A DNA stretch of 64,000 bases from Haliotis rubra. Its lineage: Eukaryota. This document shows, in pieces, positions 6,201 through 25,400 of this stretch. Location of the stretch: positions 1,116,001 through 1,180,000 of the forward strand of contig NW_025765814.1 in assembly GCF_003918875.1 (NCBI RefSeq), in the 5' to 3' direction. The notes below the pieces were generated by a model. That model worked only from the letters and a program-made list of their open reading frames with translations, had not been told where the DNA came from and searched no databases. The position numbers and the translations under genes are program-made. Each line of letters begins with the position of its first letter. The first letter of the stretch is position 1.

Positions 6201-9200
6201 AGATTATGAAACAATCAAAGAAGTGACATTTCAATCAAATAGCAATGGATATTTGTGTGAAGCAAATAATAGATATGTTATGAATAATGTAATATGTTCC
6301 TTCACATTTGCCTAATGTTTCTTTTATAAATTGTAGTTTCCTCAACAAATGTGCCACAGCTGTACAAAAATCATGGAGGGGCTACCTTGGACGTCAGTAC
6401 TACCGGCTGCTTGTCAAGGTGATTATGCTTTGTTTGTTCATCTTCCTTAATGTCTCGGTGTGGTAGTCTAGTGGTTAAAGCATCCGCTCAGCACGCCGAA
6501 GACCCGGTTCGATTCCTCACATGGGTACATTGTGTGAAGCCCATTTCTGGTGTCTCCCGCCATGATATTGCTGGAATATTGCTAAGACCATACTCACTCA
6601 CTCCTTAATGTCTCATAAAGCTTTTCCACAATAGTCAATTATTTCAAACACTTTCAAGATTGTATTTTAATAAAGTTACGCTTTGACGAATCTTTTAAAA
6701 TGCTATGACAAACAAAGATTCAATTGCATTACGTTTTGTGTTCTCAGAACAGTGTGTTCATCATGAAGCTGAATCAGTACAATGCGATGGCCACCAAGGT
6801 AATTACTCTATACATTGTTTCTTTTTCATAAAAACTGCTTAGTGACTGTTCATAATTTTGAGTTTTAAAATACAACATCACAACTGTTTCTTCTATTGAA
6901 ATTATTCTCTTTGAAAAAATAGTCTATTACAATGTACTCATGGTGTTCCATGAGTACGCTAAATCATGGACAGTCTGCAAATTAGATTACCTATCTGGAA
7001 CCTGAGTCTAATACCACCATGTTGGGACTAGTAAGTTTAAATGATATAACAACTAAAATTGACTGAAAATGATGCTCAAAAGGCAAATGAATTTTGAAAT
7101 GGTCTGTATATGTAGCAGGGCCTGGAGTCATCCCACAGATGACATCCTTACCTTGTCAGCTTGCTGATTGGGTTAACCTCTTTGGTCATATGGACAAGGC
7201 GTCTGACTTAGCACCAGAAGGTCCGTGGTTCGAATCCCAGCACGGGACTTGGAAATTTTATGGCCGCTACATTGGCGCCAAATGGCTGAGCATGTTCATA
7301 TGAAATTTGAGCAAAATAGGGTCAGTACCCTGCTATGTGGTCCGGGACGTGCCTTCTGTTGACGGGGGAGTATGTAGCAGGGCGTAGAGTCATCCCACAG
7401 ATGACATCCTTACCTTGTCAGCTTGCTGATGGGGTTAACCTCTTTGGTCATATGGACAAGGCGTCCGACTTAGCACCAGAAGGTCCGTGGTTCGAATCCC
7501 AGCACGGGACTCGGAAATTTTATGGCCGCTACATATATATAGTGTAACTGTAATATGTTTTTTGTGTTGGTACCATGGTTACAGATTCAGAAGGTGTGGC
7601 GAGGATACTATGTCAGGAAATACATCTTTAACTACTACAGCCGTAAACGGTACCTTGAGGCATTGCAAGTGAAGAATGAGATTTTCAGGTAGGTCTCACT
7701 GCTTGATATGACATTGTATTATATAAGGGGTTATGCTGGGATCATGTTTCTAAAATACATGTTAAGCAAAGGAGCTACACAAAATGTACATAAAATACAG
7801 AATAAAAGAATCATTTTGACCAACAGGACAAAGTCACTTTTACTCTGGAAAATCAAATATTCATTCAGTACGTCACTAATGTTGAACAATAGCTGACAAC
7901 AAGCTGATATAAAAATATGTGTCTGTTGATGAGTGCAAGTCTTGTACAACATTCTTTTGTATTATATGTTATTAGAATCATGATTTTCTTCCCCTAACAG
8001 AACGGAACTGGCTGATTTCACTGAACGACAGGCTCAGATCAGACGGAAAATTGAAGAACAAGAACAACACAGACAACAAGCCCAGGCTGCCAGGAAGAAT
8101 CATTATCTTTTGAGTACCGAGGTGATCCCTGGAATCTACAATTCCCCTTTCGAGCCGTGAGTTATCTTCTTTCTTACTTACTGTTTTTCTGTGAATCATA
8201 TATCTGATGTAACTTACTGCCCAACTGAGAATTGTGTCCATTATTACTTACTGCTCATCAGGGTGTCATATCCTTTAGTACTGCCCATCAGGGTGTCATA
8301 TCCTTTATTACTTACTGCCCATCAGGGTGCCATATCCTTTATTACTTAGTGTCCATCAGGGTGCCATATCCTTTATTACTTAGTGCCCATCAGTGTGCCA
8401 TATCCTTTATTACTTAGTGCTCATCAGGGTGCCATATCCTTTATTACTTACTGCCCATCAGTGTGCCATATCCTTTATTACTTAGTGTCCATCAGGGTGT
8501 CATATCCTTTATTACTTAATGCCCATCAGGGTGTCATATCCTTTATTACTTACTGCCCATCAGGGTGTCATATCTTTTATTACTTAGTGCCCATCAGGGT
8601 GCCATATCCTTTATTACTTACTGCTCATCAGTGTGTCATATCCTTTATTACTTAGTGCCCATCAGGGTGTCATATCCTTTATTACTTACTGCCCATCAGG
8701 GTGTCATATCCTTTATTACTTACTGCCCATCAGGGTGTCATATCCTTTATTACTTACTGCCCATCAGGGTGTCATATCCTTTATTACTTACTGCCCATCA
8801 GGGTGTCATATCCTTTATTACTTAGTGCCCATCAGGGTGTCATATCCTTTATTACTTACTGCCCATCAGGGTGTCATATCCTTTATTACTTACTGCCCAT
8901 CAGGGTGTCATATCCTTTATTACTTACTGTCCATCAGGGTGTCATATCCTTTATTACTTACTGCCCATCAGGGTGTGTCATATCCTTTATTACTTAGAGA
9001 CCATCAGGGTGTCATATCCTTTATTACTTAGTGCCCATCAGGGTGTCATATCTTTATTACTTAGTGCCCATCAGGTCCATCATGTGTCATATCTTTTATT
9101 ACTTACTGCCCATCAGTGTGCCATATCCTTTATTACTTACTGCCCATCAGGGTGTCATATCCTTTATTACTTACTGCCCATCAGGGTGTCATATCCTTTA

Positions 9201-12200
9201 TTACTTACTGCCCATCAGGGTGCATATCTTTTATTACTTAGTGACCATCAGGGTGTCATATCTTTTATTACTTACTGCCCATCAGGGTGTCATATCCTTT
9301 ATTACTTAGTGCCCATCAGGGTGTCATATCCTTTATTACTTAGTGCCCATCAGGGTGTCATATCCTTTATTACTTACTGCCCATCAGGGTGTCATATCCT
9401 TTATTACTTAGCCCATCAGGGTGTCATATCCTTTATTACTTACTGCCCATCAGGGTGCCATATCCTTTATCATATCAGGGTGTCCTTTATTACTTAGTGC
9501 CCATCAGGGTGTCATATCCTTTTATTACTTACTGCCCATCAGGGTGCTATCATCCTTTTTATTACTTACTGCCCATCAGGGTGTCATATCCTTTATTACT
9601 TACTGCCCATCAAGGTGTCATATCCTTTATTACTTATCAGGGTGTCATATCTTTTATTACTTACTGCCCATCAGGGTGTCATATCCTTTATTACTTAGGG
9701 TGCCCATCAGGGCCCATCAGGAGTCATATCCTTTATTACTTACTGCCCATCAGGGTGTCATATCCTTTATTACTTACTGCCCATCAGGGTGTCATATCCT
9801 TTATTACTTACTGCCCATCAGGGTGTCATATCCTTTATTACTTACTGCCCATCAGGGTGTCATATCCTTTATTACTTACTGCCCATCAGGGTGTCATATC
9901 CTTTATTACTTACTGCCCATCAGGGTGTCATATCCTTTATTACTTACTGCCCATCAGGGTGTCATATCCTTTATTACTTACTGCCCATCAGGGTGTCATA
10001 TCCTTTATTACTTACTGCCCATCAGGGAAAAGGGTGTCATATCCTTTATTACTTACTGCCCATCAGGGTGTCATATCCTTTATTACTTACTGCCCATCAG
10101 GGTGTCATATCCTTTATTACTTAGTGCCTACTGCCCATCATCAGGGTGTCATATCCTTTATTACTTACTGCCCATCAGGGTGTCATATCCTTTATTACTT
10201 AGTGTCCATCAGGGTGTCATATCCTTTATTACCTCATGCCCATCAGGGTGTCATATCCTTTATTACTTACTGCCCATCAGGGAGTCATATCCTTTATTAC
10301 TTAGAGACCATTGGGGTGTCATATCTTTTATTACTTACTGCCCATCAGGGTGTCATATCTTTATTACTTACTTACTGCCCATCAGGGTGTCATATCCTTT
10401 ATTACTTACTGCCCATCAGGGTGTCATATCCTTTATTACTTACTGCCCATCAGGGTGTCATATCCTTTATTACTTACTGCCCATCAGGGTGTGTCATATC
10501 CTTTATTACTTATTACTGCCCATCAGGGTGTCATATCCTTTATTACTTACTGCCCATCAGGGTGTCATATCCTTTATTACTTACTGCCCATCAGGGTGTC
10601 ATATCCTTTATTACTTACTGCCCATCAGGTTGTGTCATATCCTTTATTACTTACTGCCCATCAGGGTGTCATATCAGGGTGTCTTTCCTTTATTACTTAC
10701 TGCCCATCAGGGTGTCATATCTGCCCATTATTACTTACTTACTGCCCATCAGGGTGTCATATCCTTTATTACTTACACGCCCATCAGCCCATCAGGGTGT
10801 CATATCCTTTTTATTTACTTACTGCCCATCAGGGTGTCATATCTTTTATTACTTACTGCCCATCAGGGTGTCATATCCTTTATTATTACTTCAGGGCCCA
10901 TCAGGGGTCATATATCCTTTATTACTTACTGCCCATCAGGGTGTCATATCCTTTATTACTTACTGCCCATCAGGGTGTCATATCCTTTATTACTTACTGC
11001 CCATCAGGGTGTCATATCCTTTATTACTTACTGCCCATCAGGGTGTCATATCCTTTATTACTTACTGCCCATCAGGGTGTCATATCCTTTATTACTTACT
11101 GCCCATCAGGGTGTCATATCCTTTATTACTTACTGCCCATCAGGGTGTCATATCCTTTATTACTTACTGCCCATCAGGGTGTCATATCCTTTATTACTTA
11201 CTGCCCATCAGGGTGTCATATCCTTTATTACTTACTGCCCATCAGGGTGTCATATCCTTTATTACTTACTGCCCATCAGGGTGTATCATATCCTTTATTA
11301 CTTACTGCCCATCAGGGAGTCATATCCTTTATTACTTACTGCCCATCAGGGTGTCATATCCTTTATTACTTACTGCCCATCAGGGTGTCATATCCTTTAT
11401 TACTTACTGCCCATCAGGGTGTCATATCCTTTATTACTTACTGCCCATCAGGGTGTCATATCCTTTATTACTTACTGCCCATCAGGGTGTCATATCCTTT
11501 ATTACTTACTGCCCATCAGGGTGTCATATCCTTTATTACTTACTGCCCATCAGGGTGTCATATCCTTTATTACTTACTGCCCATCAGGGTGTCATATCCT
11601 TTATTACTTACTGCCCATCAGTGCTATATCCTTTATTACTTACTGCCCATCTCAGGGAATCATCCTTTCATTATCCTTTATTACTTACTGCCCATCAGGG
11701 TGTCATATCCTTTATTACTTACTGCCCATCAGGGTGTCATATCCTTCATGGAGTCATATCCTTTATTACTTACTGCCCATCAGGGTGTCATATCCTTTAT
11801 TACTTACTGCCCATCAGGGTGTCATATCTTTTATTACTTACTGCCCATCAGGGTGTCATATCCTTTATTACTTACTGCCCATCAGGAATCATATCCTTTA
11901 TTACTCATCATATCCTTTATTACTTACTGCCCATCAGGGTGTCATATCCTTTATTACTTACTGCCCATCAGGGTCATATCCTTTATTATCCTTCATATCC
12001 TTTATTACTTACTGCCCATCAGGGTGTCAGAGTGTCATATCCTTTATCATATCCTTTATTACTTACTGCCCATCAGGGAGTCATATCCTTTATTACTTAC
12101 TGCCCACAGTGCTGTATATCCTTATTACTTACTGCCCATTTATCAGGGTGTCATATCCTTATTACTTACTGCCCATCAGGGAATCATATCCTTTACTACT

Positions 12201-14407
12201 TACTGTCCATGAGGGTGTCATATCTTTTATAACTGCCCATCAGGGAGTCATATCCTTTATTACTGCAATTAGGGAATCATATCCTTTATTACTGCAATTA
12301 GGGAATCATATCCTTTATTACTGCCCATTAGGGAATCATATCCTTTATTACTGCCTATCAGGGTGTCATATCCTCGGTGAATGCTTTGTAGATTGGGCCC
12401 CAACCTTTTCAGTGTATGTTTTTGTTGTTTTACATTTCTTAACTTCATCTGATACCATGATTCAGGTATCCATCTGAGCAGGAACTCATACTACGTAGTA
12501 TCAAACCTCTTGTCCACAAGAAGAAGAAAGAAAAGGGACACCTGTTTGATCCAGCATGGGCCAGTTATAACCTGCCGCGACCAGATACACTTCCTCCATT
12601 ACACCAGAAACCTCAAGTAAGTTGCATGGAAGCTGAATGTTTTTGAAAGAGGTTGATGCTAAATATGTTTATAATGAGGCAAAATATATTCACAATAGGT
12701 TTTCATCCTCACTGATTGTTATAGAGAGAATGTAATGTTGAAAAAGTATTACTGTGAAGCAAATTTTTGATAGTCCTTCATTCATTGTTTATTGCTAATT
12801 GAGTTCTATCCTGAGTGGTGGTATTCTTACAAGGAATTGATTTTATGTGCCACCATGTTCGTTGTTTAAGGGTCCATTCCGTGATCCTGAGGATGTACAG
12901 AAACAGCGATACAAGCCGTTCCAGCCCTCACTGAGAGTGGCCACCTCCTTCTACTCGCTGGAGGATGCTCGCAAACAGATGAAGGGCGAGGAGTGGGTCA
13001 CCCGTTTGAACGATGATGTGTGAGTGGGCTCTTCTCGATGATAAATATTCAGACTGTTCTTCATACAATTCTGAGTCATCTTTTCGACTGTAAAACATCA
13101 ATGTCACACTTTTCACATGAACATTTTTGTTGAAATGTTCTTCACATATCTTATTTCAATTTTACTAACTTTTTTGAATTTTAAGAATCTGAATATTGAA
13201 CTGTTAAGCATTATATGAGTTGCATCTGTTGATCAAAGAATCATCTTATTTGGTATTTGGCTGTTAAGATTATCAAAACTGAAATGTTAGCCATTAACCT
13301 GTTGTAAATATACTGGCTCATACTGTATTCTTTGTATTAGGTTCGTACCCTTTTCAAGACGACACACATCTTATAAACCACTGTTACACACCACCTCCAA
13401 GTTCGGCCACCTGCCGTATGGCACCAAGTTCTTCAGGGAGGAGTTCTTGGACAAACATGTCTCTAATCAGGTAAGGATCATGATTTCTCCTCTGTGGGTG
13501 GGAAACCAACAGAAGCTGACTGCCAAAGATAACTTCCTTGAAGTATCCATGCAAATCCCACTCCAAATTAAACTCCTCGGCTAAATACCCCAAAGCTTAT
13601 CAAAAGCTGTTTTAAGCAAATACTATACATGAGTCACATCACTGGTTCGTCATCAGTTTGTTTGTTTATTTGCATATTAAGCAAATACAGGATCCAGAAC
13701 TGATTTCAACAGGAGATATTATTTCAGTGAAATTTCATCATATTGCTTTTGCAGGCCAATGTGATGGCATCAAATATTCTCTCAGACACTGAAGCTCATT
13801 AGCTGTATTTTTTCACTTGAGACACTTGTTATTACTGTTTAATAACTGAAAAGGTTGAATGAATGATTTGAGAAGATAAAAATGCCTTTTGATATCAAAC
13901 ATGTCACAATTGTTGTTGAAAGTTCTGACTCTGCAATCCTTGAAGTTTTAAGCTGGACCCATGTTAATATTGTGTTTAATATCAAAAGCCAAGTTGGTGA
14001 TGTTCTCAACAATCTTTCCAAGGAAAGCTAACTGACCATTAAGTAAATATCCACTGTGGCTAAACTAGGCTGGAATATCCAAGTTATATTTTGGCTCAAC
14101 TGACAAGTCTGTGCATAGTCAAAACCATGTAATGGAATTGACAATGATTTTGTAAACAAAATGGCAACTGCCAAGCAGATTTTGATTAGTTGCAGAATGT
14201 TTTTATATCAACAGAACTGTCATAGTCAGTTAACTAACTTTTATCTGGAACATGATTCAGCATATGATTAGTTTTCCTAAGGATACTGTAGAACTGTATT
14301 TTGCTAACACTGTGACTTCCTCTCCTTTTCAGAATTTCAAGACTCTTGTACAACCGGTTCCAATCTTTGACAAGCTCAATGACACATATTCACAAGGCCA
14401 GGTATAG
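3284..14407 (+). CDS. SPATA17: Spermatogenesis-associated protein 17 (IQ-motif ciliary/flagellar protein), 10 coding exons
   Basis: Exons 3284-3351, 5765-5854, 6337-6418, 6748-6798, 7585-7688, 8001-8156, 12466-12616, 12871-13019, 13341-13470, 14333-14407. All GT-AG, phases consistent, no stops. Three IQ motifs (VQAWFRG, VQKSWRGY, IQKVWRGYYVRK) plus HYLLSTEVIPGIYNSPF, KPQGPFR and QRYKPFQPSLRVAT. AATAAA near 15098. Confidence 0.92.
3625..4210 (+). mobile_element. 5'-truncated Rex1/Babar-like LINE remnant in SPATA17 intron 1
   Basis: Decayed RT C-terminus YLGTFIDSKLNW..QQRLHF..LRYFNV..FYVAFIQSILTF..WYG..LLPSGR..SFIP, ending in a CTATT-repeat tail. Confidence 0.75.
5380..5565 (-). mobile_element. 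Retroposon family B, 5'-truncated copy
   Basis: Same body and tail as 2490-2729. Confidence 0.75.
6457..6604 (+). mobile_element. Short tRNA-derived SINE family A
   Basis: A box GTAGTCTAGTGG, B box GGTTCGATTCC, body GTGTGAAGCCCATTTCTGGTGTC, ACTC tail, target duplication CTTAATGTCTC. Confidence 0.85.
7111..7533 (+). mobile_element. Miniature non-autonomous LTR retrotransposon (TRIM) with tRNA-derived LTRs
   Basis: Two 161-bp direct repeats (7111-7271, 7373-7533; 5 mismatches) bounded by TGTAGC..GCTACA. PBS-like TGGCGCC at 7273, purine tract GACGGGGGAG before LTR2, TATA target duplication. A box TGGTCATATGG and B box GGTTCGAATCC in each LTR. Confidence 0.9.
8240..12372. repeat. 34-bp minisatellite, ~120 copies, filling SPATA17 intron 6
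   Basis: Unit CATCAGGGTGTCATATCCTTTATTACTTACTGCC, degenerate at both edges. Confidence 0.97.
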
Positions 14408-22400: not shown

Positions 22401-25400
22401 AGTGATCAACAACATGAGCATTGATCTACACAATTGGGATACAATGACATGTGTCAACCAAGTCAGCAAGCCTGACCACCCGATCCAGTTAGTCGCCTCT
22501 TACGACAAGCATGGGTTACTGAAGATCAATTCTAACCCGGACCTTCACGAGGTCGTTACCTCAATGTAAGTTAGACATACTGAAATAGTCAAAATGATCG
22601 ATACATACAATTAGCCATACCATTAACACTTCAAAACAATAGTTGCCTCTTCTTTTAACCCAGAGCTCCAGATAAGATTTAGCTCATGTTGGGTACTGTA
22701 CCCGCTGTATTTTTTTGGAGTGGGTATTATGAATGTTGAGTGGGTATTTCATTTTCCGTTACCCACTGCTTTCAAATATGTGCGTATTTCAGTCATTTTA
22801 CTCACCTAAGTATTATGTCATTGAGTAAGTTTACTAAGCAGGTATGTTCTGCCTCATGTCATACCTAATCAAAACCAACTTAAATATAATGGAAATGATT
22901 TCATAAAAAATCACTCATCCTATACTGACAGTACAACACTTGTCCTATACTAACAGTACAACTTGATAGCAATCGATGTCTTTTTCATTACGCAAGTGAT
23001 TTTTATAAATATATTCCGTACGCATTTGTTTTAAACTTTTTTCGTATCTAACATTTTAGATGCGTAATTGGTATGCAACAATTATTTTTCAATGCGTAAT
23101 TGGAAATTTTCTATGCGTATTTTACCCGGATACGCAGCTTATCTGGGCCTCTGTTAACCTTTCAGGTGATACACAGCGGAGTGAGGGAGATTGGTTTTAT
23201 GCCACTTTTAGCAATAATCCAGCAATATCACTGCAGAGGACAGATGAAATTGGCTTCACACATGGTACCCATGGATGTGAATGAAACCTGGGTCTTAAGG
23301 TGTGAAGAACAAATGCTTGAACCACGAGGTTACCCCACTGTTCCTTCACAAGCCACCCAAGGTTGTGGGGAGACAAGAAGTGATTGTTAGTCAACTGAAA
23401 CAACTGGTTAAACACACGCGGTGGCATTGAAATGTAAACAAAACTTGCGACAAATGTCCCAGAGACACAAAAACATGAAAGACGTAATCATCTTGAATCA
23501 AGAAAACAAAACATAGCGACAAAGATATCCATGATATCACTACCAAAACACTTCTAGGCAGAAATAGTACTTTCGGAAACCACAAGACATAAATGCAAAA
23601 AATGTAGCTTAGAATAAATGAACATTCATAAATAGTGGAATCTGCACACAAATATCAACATATACTTGTATCCTGAGCTATTTATCTTGTTCAGAGAAAA
23701 ACCAAAGAGCTAGAAGGAATTATGGATTATCTGTCTGAAGTGAATAAATTGTGTAAGTCCCGATCATTTTGTGAGAGACTTTCAGCATTCATTCATGAGG
23801 GACAGTTTTGACTTATTTATTGTATATGTTACTCATTGACATTTTAAAAAAGCATATTATTAGATACGAGTTCTACCATGACTCCAGTAAATACTGGATT
23901 CTGATTGGTCAATTAAAGTCATTCAGAGGTGTATAATCGTGTTATATACCTCTGATTTTCTAACACAGCATGTATTTTTTTAAAATCTTAATAATGTGGT
24001 TATGGTAGAATGGAGATAAACATACTGTGTTGGTAAATCAGAGGTATATAACGAAATTATAATAGCTCTAAATTTTTTATTATTTGTGAACCTCTCAACC
24101 TTCAAGTCAAAAGTTAGTTTAGAGCTATTATAATTTCGTTATATACCTCTGATTTACCAACACAGTATGTTTATCTCCTCTTTTTAACCCTACGGAGAAA
24201 CTTCACTGAAGGTAGTCTATAGTAGTCATGTAATCAACTTGTGACATCATGAACAACTGATGAGGTCATGTCATTGTTTCCTCAACAATGAAGCACTCTG
24301 ATGCATTATGGCTTCAACTGATCAATCAGCTAAAATGCACATGTTCAAATATCGAAAAACGATCACTCTCCCTTATGGGTAATATTGTAATAATTATAGA
24401 AGTTTATCCAGTCATGCAGCAAGGGTTTGTGTGATGATGTGGTCATGCAAATAAACTGCAAACAAGTGCAAGTGTTGGGGAGTTGAGCCAGGGAGCACTG
24501 CCACACTGGGTCAGATATCACAATTACCCAAAGAGACCACTCTGCTCAACATGGTCAAATAGAAGATCGCTGAATGCAAAAGATGGCAAATCATTAGGGC
24601 TTCACATTTTAAGGATTCCTTGCATTAATGTGGCAGCATTCAACAAAAACCCAGGCAAAGAGTAGGTATTATGCTCATCAGAACCACCATCATGGAGACC
24701 TTGCAGGTTTTCTTCCTTGAAATTGCCCACAAAATAACATAACAAAATACTTTCTTGTTTTTAAAGACAAACACAGCCTTAAACTATTGCTTATTCAAAT
24801 TAAATATATACTGAAAAAGAAATAATTACTTTGATCCTAAAAATGTCACCAATCAAACCAAAGGGAGGTAACTCTAATCTGAATGTGCCATAACATTTTC
24901 TTCATAATACAAATGACAAGTGGTAAAACCTGATTTTTCTGACAGATAATTTATGACTATTGAAACTATGGAGTGTTATGCATGCTATCAGTGTTTAAAT
25001 TCCTATTGATATCATACAATTACACAACATAAAATTCCTCGATAGGTTGATATACAATTAGACTCCCAGAACAAGCCCTAATAACCTTGACAATCTTTAC
25101 AAAAGAAATATAAAACAGCCTGGCCCATTCTCCATAACAATTTAATTATAAAAATGTCTGTGTTGATAAACAACAAAAGACACAAATGTCAGTCTTATTT
25201 CTCATAACACCTGGAAAGAACAAAGAAAACATGAAAGCATAAATGACATAACATACCATACCAAACAATGCACCATTATAATACCATGCAAAGCATGCAT
25301 GCAGCAATAGCACTGGGTGACATGTGTAAACAAGTGTGACTATATGTCTACAGCCCCTGTCCTCGGATATATAGTAATATACACCACCATTTGTATAATA

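What the first reader, a model, noticed from the sequence alone, without database searches (positions are those of the whole stretch)
7111..7533. Complete 423-bp LTR retroelement whose LTRs are built around a tRNA gene (SINE-LTR hybrid)
Seen: two 161-bp LTRs (TGTAGC...GCTACA, 5 mismatches) and a TATA target duplication. The 101-bp interior holds only a PBS-like TGGCGCCAAA and a polypurine tract. Each LTR contains a tRNA-like block: A box TGGTCATATGG 7183-7193, tRNA-Arg-like AAGGCGTCTGACTT, B box GGTTCGAATCC 7227-7237 and a T4 at 7256-7259. Known: plant Cassandra TRIMs carry 5S promoters in their LTRs. I recall tRNA-bearing equivalents named Ajax being reported from molluscs, so the class may be known though this family may not be. 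Inference: Pol III transcription with mobilisation in trans by a Gypsy-like partner (4-bp TSD, tRNA-Lys-like PBS). The T4 just before the PBS raises the question of how a full-length RNA is made. The element ends 51 bp upstream of a SPATA17 acceptor.
Basis: partly seen in the sequence, partly recalled or inferred. Interest (0 to 1): 0.78.

Follow-up and report, generated by a model that had tools for sequence, protein, structure and literature searches.

The report
Abalone Helenus-type miniature LTR retrotransposon
This is a real but dead copy of a small, non-coding LTR retrotransposon whose repeats carry a tRNA-Arg-derived Pol III promoter; the type was described in 2024 as "Helenus", but I found no report of it in a snail-class mollusc (here most likely the blacklip abalone).

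Summary
Window 7111-7271 and 7373-7533 are 161-bp direct repeats (156/161 identical) with TG..CA ends. They enclose a 101-bp non-coding interior and are flanked by TATA/TATA.

It is one copy of a mobile family:
- At least 43 full-length copies exist in this genome, and 24 of 29 loci read have distinct perfect 4-bp target duplications.
- There are hundreds of solo LTRs, also with 4-bp duplications, plus three-LTR arrays and one nested insertion.
- A contig from a differently labelled organism joins 7108 to 7536, skipping 427 bp (423 + 4). That is a precise empty site.

Family features:
- The PBS is an 18-nt perfect complement of the host tRNA-Lys(CTT) 3' end. The window copy has lost part of it.
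- The LTR block derives from tRNA-Arg(TCG): 37/45 identical to the host gene, no acceptor stem, below Rfam's tRNA threshold. It is a promoter relic, not a tRNA gene.

The class is known: Helenus (Kojima 2024). The paper lists molluscan Helenus only from pteriomorph bivalves. The host here matches Haliotis rubra by assembly size, so this looks like a new family in a new host class.

A Ty3/Gypsy family with the same PBS, near-identical LTR termini and 4-bp duplications is a candidate helper. Pol III transcription is untested. Other readers in this scan noted the same TRIM type elsewhere in this genome.

The parts
7107..7110 (.). Left copy of the 4-bp target-site duplication (TATA)
   Evidence: The empty-site contig in run X4 skips exactly 423+4 bp (table 8).
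7111..7271 (+). 5' LTR, 161 bp, TGTAGC...GCTACA
   Evidence: 156/161 identical to the 3' LTR. Family copies.
7111..7159 (+). First 49 nt of the LTR (inferred U3). Elsewhere in the genome the same 49 nt form a head-to-tail minisatellite.
   Evidence: One search shows 'goes back 49' joints (7159 to 7111) in all four runs.
7183..7240 (+). tRNA-Arg(TCG)-derived block with no acceptor stem, holding the Pol III A and B boxes
   Evidence: Rfam tRNA 15.4 bits here and 18.6 bits in a typical copy, model positions 8-63. A typical copy is 37/45 identical to host tRNA-Arg(TCG).
7183..7193 (+). A box TGGTCATATGG (family majority TGGTCATGTGG, 53/60 LTRs)
7227..7237 (+). B box GGTTCGAATCC, a perfect match to the consensus (50/60 LTRs)
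7256..7259 (+). The only T4 run in the LTR; inferred leaky Pol III terminator and R/U5 border
   Evidence: A single T4 at this position in 55/60 LTRs. T4 occurs in only 1/31 interiors. Its function is inferred.
7272..7372 (+). Non-coding interior, 101 bp (family mode 106 bp)
7273..7286 (+). Decayed primer-binding site. The family has an 18-nt tRNA-Lys(CTT) complement; this copy has lost 4-5 nt and has substitutions.
   Evidence: Other copies carry extra letters at 7281-7283 (table 4).
7361..7372 (+). Polypurine tract end GACGGGGGAGTA, abutting the 3' LTR
   Evidence: The same GGGGGAGTA end occurs 12 times in the published Helenus sequence file.
7373..7533 (+). 3' LTR, 161 bp. A box 7445-7455, B box 7489-7499, T4 7518-7521.
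7534..7537 (.). Right copy of the target-site duplication (TATA)
7585..7689 (+). Neighbouring host exon-like stretch (IQ-like motif), 51 nt downstream of the element. It is context, not part of the element.
   Evidence: No Pfam hit. SPATA17 identity not tested.

Best explanation
Window 7111-7533 is one insertion of a Helenus-type TRIM, a non-autonomous miniature LTR retrotransposon. Each LTR contains a tRNA-Arg(TCG)-derived Pol III promoter module.

Shown:
- It belongs to a family of about 150 full-length elements and several hundred solo LTRs.
- The family inserts with 4-bp target duplications.
- It carries an 18-nt PBS for host tRNA-Lys(CTT) and a short G-rich PPT.
- This particular insertion is absent, with a precise empty site, from another sequenced abalone sample.
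- This copy has a damaged PBS, so it is most likely immobile.

Inferred mechanism:
- TFIIIC binds the A and B boxes and Pol III starts about 10-18 nt upstream of the A box (around 7165-7172).
- A fraction of polymerases read through the weak T4 in the 5' LTR, cross the PBS, interior and PPT, and stop at the same T4 in the 3' LTR.
- This gives U3 of about 55-60 nt, R of about 90 nt and U5 of 12 nt.
- A Ty3/Gypsy element supplies Gag, RT and integrase in trans. tRNA-Lys primes minus-strand synthesis, and the integrase recognises the TGTAGCAGG...GCTACA ends.

The confidence given is for the classification as a mobile Helenus-type TRIM; the Pol III read-through mechanism on its own I would put at about 0.6.
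For: Mobility and structure:
- At least 43 full-length copies at 87-92% identity.
- 24 of 29 loci have distinct perfect 4-bp duplications.
- 9 solo LTRs were read: 6 have perfect 4-bp duplications and 2 more match at 3 of 4.
- Three-LTR arrays with outer duplications, and one insertion nested inside another copy.
- Within-copy LTR identity averages 96.9% and reaches 100%, against 94.7% between copies.
- Empty site: run X4, contig record 9, joins 7108 to 7536.

Counts of 24-mers with up to 2 mismatches:
- LTR 5' end 1340, inflated by a 49-bp satellite.
- LTR 3' part 561.
- LTR/PBS junction 134.
- PPT/LTR junction 159.

PBS: it matches host tRNA-Lys(CTT), whose genes ARAGORN calls in ~300-bp-spaced arrays.

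tRNA origin. The 19-mer spanning the A box occurs with a changed base three positions upstream at only 26 sites, which read like mutated LTR copies, so I found no separate SINE with this head.

Class definition: Kojima 2024, PMC10886601.

Candidate helper at L063:
- gag(PNMA-like)-PR-RT-RNaseH-IN domain order.
- 565-bp LTRs, 99.3% identical.
- Target duplications TACC, and ATTA in a second copy.
- LTR ends TGTCGCAGG...GCGACA.
- 21 nt at the PBS identical to the TRIM.
Against: - No RNA evidence. No run holding this stretch is on record as RNA.
- Within this young family the A and B boxes are no better conserved than the rest of the LTR: 0.985-0.988 against 0.982 for the upstream part. There is therefore no selection signal for promoter function from these data.
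- The A box departs from the TRGCY pattern at one position (TGGTC).
- The absence of other T4 runs in about 260 nt is close to what base composition predicts (my estimate, not a test).
- The link to the Gypsy helper rests on short shared motifs only.
Confidence: 0.8

Rival explanations
1. It is an ordinary Pol II-transcribed TRIM (or one mobilised from host read-through RNA). The tRNA-like block is then only the fossil of a SINE or tRNA insertion into an ancestral LTR and has no promoter role.
For: - Conservation along the LTR is uniform.
- A T4 lies between the supposed start site and the PBS.
- The D and T stems are degenerate, the tRNA score is below threshold, and one A-box position is off consensus.
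- No RNA data.
Against: - The B box is a perfect consensus and the A-B spacing is tRNA-like.
- In 55/60 LTRs the only T4 lies just after the tRNA block, and interiors almost never contain T4.
- The same layout recurs in dozens of independently diverged Helenus families, with box A and box B motifs conserved (Kojima 2024).
- The whole element is within Pol III length limits.
Confidence: 0.17
2. It is a local tandem duplication of a tRNA-derived SINE, not an LTR element.
For: None beyond the bare repeat-spacer-repeat layout.
Against: - Dozens of dispersed copies share the same LTR-PBS-PPT-LTR order, each with its own 4-bp duplication.
- The junction motifs recur 134 and 159 times.
- The empty site removes the whole 423-bp unit plus one duplication copy.
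- There is no A-rich or LINE-type tail.
Confidence: 0.01
3. The 161-bp unit is itself the main mobile element, inserting on its own, and the two-LTR forms are secondary composites.
For: Single 161-bp units outnumber interiors several-fold (against 30, 31).
Against: - Solo units have the same TG..CA ends and 4-bp duplications expected from LTR-LTR recombination.
- A 161-bp unit has no PBS or PPT with which to replicate.
- Kojima reports similar LTR-to-interior ratios for Helenus-2C_CGi, 1124 to 402.
Confidence: 0.02

Closest known systems
Helenus (TRIMp3), Kojima 2024, Biology 13:119 (PMC10886601); nearest-looking published families are Helenus-1_PiIm, Helenus-1_CGi and Helenus-2_CVi
   Same: - TRIM of about 420 bp, with 120-190-bp LTRs holding a tRNA-like block with A and B boxes.
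- tRNA-Lys PBS after a 1-nt spacer.
- PPT ending GGGGGAGTA.
- 4-bp target duplications, solo LTRs and tandem arrays.
- Gypsy-type PBS partners.
- The motif GGGTTAACC just 5' of the A box occurs three times in the published file, including Helenus-1_CGi and Helenus-2_CVi.
   Different: - No published sequence contains any of nine 11-17-nt motifs specific to this family. FASTA line breaks could hide a few.
- The tRNA source is Arg(TCG).
- The PBS match is the full 18 nt.
- The host appears to be a gastropod, whereas the paper lists molluscan Helenus only from Pteriomorphia bivalves and never uses the word gastropod.
Ajax (Kojima 2024)
   Same: A TRIM with a small-RNA-derived Pol III promoter in its LTRs.
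   Different: Ajax carries a 5S rRNA fragment, makes 5-bp duplications, uses a tRNA-Leu PBS and is known only from two nemerteans. Rfam reported no 5S match here.
Cassandra (plant TRIM; Kalendar et al. 2008, as summarised in PMC10886601)
   Same: The Pol III promoter and terminator both lie inside each LTR. Transcription is described as starting in the 5' LTR and ending in the 3' LTR, which is the precedent for the T4 read-through model.
   Different: 5S-derived, found in plants, 565-860 bp, and experimentally shown to be transcribed.
Mollusc tRNA-Arg-headed SINEs (MESC superfamily; Matetovici et al. 2016, PMC4758252)
   Same: tRNA-Arg-derived Pol III head. The family is reported from Haliotis and bivalves, so it is a plausible donor type for the LTR module.
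   Different: Those are LINE-dependent SINEs with tails and core domains. Here the module sits inside an LTR, and I found no separate family with this exact head outside the LTR.

Membership tests
Helenus (TRIMp3) | Short non-autonomous element: two LTRs around a short non-coding interior | tested here: met
   161 + 101 + 161 bp, with no ORF possible. The family mode is 161 + 106 + 161.
Helenus (TRIMp3) | tRNA-derived sequence with box A and box B inside the LTR | tested here: met
   Rfam tRNA model positions 8-63 at 15.4-18.6 bits, below threshold. 37/45 identical to host tRNA-Arg(TCG). The B box is perfect. The A box is TGGTC..TGG, one position off TRGCY.
Helenus (TRIMp3) | PBS complementary to a tRNA, just after the 5' LTR | tested here: met
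   The family PBS is an 18/18 complement of host tRNA-Lys(CTT) plus CCA. In the window copy itself it is decayed.
Helenus (TRIMp3) | Polypurine tract before the 3' LTR | tested here: met
   Interior ends in GACGGGGGAGTA (the last 12 of 24 nt compared) in 17/31 interiors, the rest being close variants. The junction 24-mer has 159 genomic matches.
Helenus (TRIMp3) | 4-bp target-site duplication (animal Helenus) | tested here: met
   24/29 full-length loci and 6/9 solo LTRs have perfect duplications. The empty site skips 427 bp.
Helenus (TRIMp3) | Transcription from the internal Pol III promoter | not testable with these tools
   No RNA run holds the stretch. Kojima states that this is unvalidated for Helenus as a whole.
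Helenus (TRIMp3) | Sequence kinship to a published Helenus family | tested here: inconclusive
   Only short motifs are shared: GGGTTAACC, ATCAGAAGGT, GGGGGAGTA and TTGGCGCCCAAC. A proper alignment was not run, because the published sequences cannot be passed to the tools by reference.
Ajax | 5S rRNA-derived promoter in the LTR and 5-bp duplications | tested here: not met
   No 5S match in the Rfam scan. Duplications are 4 bp.
tRNA-derived SINE (SINE2) | Single tRNA-headed unit with a LINE-type tail and variable-length duplications | tested here: not met
   TG..CA ends, PBS, PPT, fixed 4-bp duplications and no tail.
Functional tRNA-Arg gene | Cloverleaf with acceptor stem, called by tRNA finders | tested here: not met
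   ARAGORN finds none in the window or in 16 family loci, although it calls the true host tRNA-Arg and tRNA-Lys genes.

The most novel reading that the evidence does not exclude
This is the first Helenus/TRIMp3 family recorded from Gastropoda (Haliotis), and it shares its pre-A-box leader, PBS type and PPT end with oyster and pearl-oyster families. Molluscan Helenus, and its partnership with a tRNA-Lys-primed Gypsy clade, would then predate the bivalve-gastropod split or have crossed between the classes, rather than arising within Pteriomorphia as proposed. In addition, the single conserved T4 would mark the R/U5 border. The element would then make two Pol III products: an abundant tRNA-like RNA of about 90 nt, and a rare read-through genomic RNA.
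Probability: 0.4. Interest if true: 0.5.

Novelty: new member of a known kind. Interest (0 to 1): 0.35.

Why it matters
- It extends a recently defined class of Pol III-promoted LTR elements (TRIMp3) to a second mollusc class. This bears on the proposed pteriomorph origin of molluscan Helenus.
- It supplies a concrete pairing of TRIM, candidate Gypsy helper and primer tRNA, together with a testable U3/R/U5 map.
- Practically, several hundred tRNA-Arg-like blocks in abalone genomes are LTR relics, not tRNA genes.
- Insertions such as this one are present or absent between abalone samples, so they could serve as markers. This one lies 51 nt upstream of a splice acceptor.

Tried and rejected
- ARAGORN on the window and on 16 family loci found no tRNA, so the block is not a tRNA gene.
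- Exact-motif look-ups in Kojima's sequence file found no close published relative. Line wrapping limits this check.
- I looked for distinct sub-families among low-identity hits (L037, L048, L038). They are only decayed or deleted copies of the same family, so no between-family test of box conservation was possible.
- I looked for a free SINE with the same head. Only 26 sites turned up, and they read like mutated LTR copies.
- The RNA fold of the tRNA block plus tail is not a cloverleaf (z = -2.3), which is uninformative.
- Sequencing runs: organism names are coded and no holder is on record as RNA, so expression could not be tested.
- The long ORFs at 8871-12477 are an artefact of a 34-bp satellite.
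- Pfam on the 35-aa exon found nothing. SPATA17 identity was left untested, because a 35-aa query cannot reach full-length proteins in the word search.
- No consensus of the element or of the Gypsy candidate was built. Only counts of short motif variants are reported.
Full report
**1. Observation**

Window 7111-7271 and 7373-7533 are 161-bp direct repeats with 5 mismatches and no gaps. Both start with TGTAGC and end with GCTACA. They are flanked by TATA at 7107-7110 and 7534-7537, and they enclose a 101-bp interior.

Rfam's tRNA model aligns 7183-7240 to model positions 8-63, at 15.4 bits (E 4.7; gathering score 29). ARAGORN calls nothing. An AG at 7583-7584 precedes a 35-codon open stretch with an IQ-like motif. 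I did not test its SPATA17 identity.

**2. A mobile family, not a local duplication**

The window's own genome (1.378 Gb, 2855 contigs) holds at least 43 full-length matches at 87-92% identity, out of about 1390 first-look candidates.

I read 29 distinct loci:
- 24 have a perfect 4-bp target duplication, with a different sequence at most sites.
- 1 matches at 3 of 4 positions.
- 2 run on into a further interior, so they are arrays.
- 2 have no duplication.

Three loci are LTR-interior-LTR-interior-LTR arrays, and the two I read have outer duplications. One copy sits inside the LTR of another, with duplication CTTA.

The two LTRs of a copy are more alike than LTRs of different copies: mean 96.9%, up to 100%, against 94.7%. 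This is expected if both LTRs are identical at insertion.

Counts of 24-mers with up to 2 mismatches:

| Motif | Matches |
|---|---|
| LTR 5' end | 1340 |
| LTR 3' part | 561 |
| LTR/PBS junction | 134 |
| PPT/LTR junction | 159 |

The first figure is inflated by a 49-bp satellite made of LTR nt 1-49. That leaves roughly 150 interiors and several hundred solo LTRs. I took 20 unpaired LTR-start hits in list order: 11 were full-length solo LTRs and two more (L044, L050) were complete LTRs adjoining part of an interior. Of 9 solo LTRs read for flanks, 6 had perfect 4-bp duplications and 2 more matched at 3 of 4. A further solo LTR has duplication AACA.

**3. Direct evidence that this copy is an insertion**

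I laid the contigs of four public runs, carrying four coded organism labels, on window 6900-7800. Run X4 (organism B) has one 1210-nt contig whose positions 405-669 match window 7800-7536 and whose positions 670-880 match 7108-6900 (table 8). The contig therefore skips 7109-7535, which is 427 bp: the 423-bp element plus one TATA. That is the exact empty site predicted for a 4-bp duplication.

In run X1 (organism A, the best holder) two haplotype-like contigs both stop at 7110, as assembly graphs do at a repeat edge. All four runs contain thousands of contigs of the family, so the family is shared among these organisms.

**4. Anatomy of the family**

*PBS.* In 14 of 31 interiors the first 24 nt read T + TGGCGCCCAACGTGGGGC + TGAGC, and most others differ by one or two letters. 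The 18-mer is the exact complement of the 3' end (plus CCA) of host tRNA genes that end in GGTTCGAGCCCCACGTTGGGCG. There are 103 such sites, mostly in ~300-bp-spaced arrays, and ARAGORN calls five of them tRNA-Lys(CTT).

The window copy reads TGGCGCCAAATGGC. It has lost 4-5 nt and changed others, and its interior is 101 bp rather than 106. It is most likely unable to prime.

*PPT.* The interior ends in GACGGGGGAGTA in 17 of 31 copies, with close variants in the rest.

*tRNA-like block.* The most frequent anticodon-arm variants carry CTTCGGATC or CTTCTGATC. The A box is TGGTCATGTGG in 53/60 LTRs and the B box GGTTCGAATCC in 50/60. Against a host tRNA-Arg(TCG) gene (L065:1484-1558) a typical LTR is 37/45 identical from the D loop to the T loop. 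A typical copy scores 18.6 bits on Rfam tRNA, again over positions 8-63 only. ARAGORN calls no tRNA in 16 family loci. The block is therefore a tRNA-Arg-derived promoter module, not a tRNA gene.

*T4.* Exactly one T4 run, at LTR position about 146, is present in 55/60 LTRs. Only 1/31 interiors contains T4.

*Limits.* Conservation is uniform along the LTR: A box 0.988, B box 0.985, upstream 0.982. The lower value between the boxes (0.939) falls on a stretch with three CpGs. These data therefore give no selection signal for the boxes.

**5. Host**

Other agents' notes in this scan call the genome Haliotis rubra. I checked this against the assembly paper, which gives 1,378,265,264 bp in 2,854 scaffolds (PMC6774278). 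G000 has 1,378,282,171 bp in 2855 contigs. The difference is one contig of 16,907 bp, which is about the size of a mitochondrial genome (that size is from my own knowledge). I take the host to be the blacklip abalone, a vetigastropod. This is strong but indirect evidence.

**6. What is known**

Kojima (2024, PMC10886601) defined two groups:
[quoted passage not shown] The likely helpers are Gypsy elements.
- Ajax: the 5S-bearing counterpart, found in two nemerteans, with 5-bp duplications.

Molluscan Helenus (51 families) is listed only from five orders of pteriomorph bivalves, and an origin in that subclass is proposed. The paper never uses the word gastropod. In the held library only four papers contain Helenus, retrotransposon and tRNA together, and none of the three distinct works listed concerns gastropods. 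Two further searches on TRIMs in gastropods and on Haliotis SINEs gave nothing closer. Repbase and Dfam could not be consulted.

Nine motifs of 11-17 nt specific to this family are absent from the published sequence file. Shorter shared motifs are:
- GGGTTAACC just 5' of the A box, three occurrences, including Helenus-1_CGi and Helenus-2_CVi.
- ATCAGAAGGT in Helenus-1_PiIm.
- The PPT end GGGGGAGTA, 12 occurrences.
- The T + TGGCGCCCAAC start of the interior.

By eye, about 14 of 23 bivalve LTRs in the part of the file that I read also have a T4-T5 run between the B box and the LTR end. This was not computed.

tRNA-Arg-headed SINEs are known from Haliotis and bivalves (PMC4758252). That fits the proposed origin by insertion of a SINE into an LTR. 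In this genome, however, the 19-mer spanning the A box occurs with a changed base three positions upstream at only 26 sites, and these read like mutated LTR copies.

**7. Candidate helper (observation only)**

I searched for the PBS plus three following letters, excluding the TRIM's own LTR end. This found six sites, three of which belong to one other element family.

At L063 (C103:235838-243093) that element has:
- 565-bp LTRs, 99.3% identical.
- Target duplication TACC.
- LTR ends TGTCGCAGG...CCTGCGACA, against the TRIM's TGTAGCAGG...GCCGCTACA.
- AAA + the same 18-nt PBS + TGA.
- A PPT ending AGAGGGGGAGGG.
- ORF pieces with PNMA-like gag, aspartic protease, RT, RNase H and integrase in the Ty3/Gypsy order.

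A second copy (L064) has duplication ATTA. In both copies the coding region is split into several ORFs. I did not look for or rank intact copies.

The shared termini, PBS and duplication length make this Gypsy family, or a close relative, a reasonable helper. This is inference from short motifs.

**8. Mechanism**

My best reading:
- Pol III starts about 10-18 nt upstream of the A box.
- It sometimes reads through the T4 in the 5' LTR and terminates at the T4 in the 3' LTR.
- This gives U3 of about 55-60 nt, R of about 90 nt and U5 of 12 nt.
- tRNA-Lys then primes reverse transcription and the Gypsy integrase inserts the product.

All of it is inferred, because no RNA evidence was obtainable. 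The main rival is Pol II or read-through transcription with the tRNA block as a passenger. I cannot exclude that rival.

**9. Verdict**

The element is real and well formed but inactive. It belongs to a class described in 2024. I found no published close relative and no report of the class from gastropods, so it is a new member of a known kind and of moderate interest.

Noticed in passing
L069:1213-2480 (G000:C392:124712-125979); L042:551-1014 (C58); unit = window 7111-7159: The first 49 nt of the LTR form head-to-tail minisatellite arrays, about 25 units at C392 and 10 at C58. 'Goes back 49' joints occur in contigs of all four runs laid. Summed depth over this part of the LTR is far higher than over the tRNA part, so the satellite is probably much more abundant than the element.
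   Followed up: partly
window 8237-12374: A 34-bp satellite of about 100 units. It explains the long overlapping ORFs at 8871-12477 and their spurious Fib_alpha hits.
   Followed up: yes
G000:C2098:1021659-1048395 and C692:22607-28031; G000:C2196:153-34450: Long tandem arrays of tRNA genes with a period of about 300 bp: tRNA-Lys(CTT), 103 sites in all, and tRNA-Arg(TCG), about 90 sites in one array.
   Followed up: partly
L063:439-7694 (G000:C103:235838-243093); L064 (C2744): A Ty3/Gypsy element with 565-bp LTRs 99.3% identical, 4-bp duplications and a tRNA-Lys PBS. It is the candidate helper of the TRIM. The coding region is split into several ORFs in both copies seen.
   Followed up: partly
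L009 (C2746:185718-186414), L030 (C1002:1325863-1326568), C2192:365828-366527; L002 (C2471): Three-LTR tandem forms of the TRIM; the two read (L009, L030) are flanked by one 4-bp duplication. One copy is nested inside another copy's LTR.
   Followed up: partly
window 7534-7584: The insertion lies in the sense orientation 51 nt upstream of a splice acceptor. It is absent from another abalone sample, so a splicing effect is possible.
   Followed up: no
window 22465-22554: Another first-reader note on this window (s1-344912, a headless retroposon with a pseudoknot). I did not examine it.
   Followed up: no
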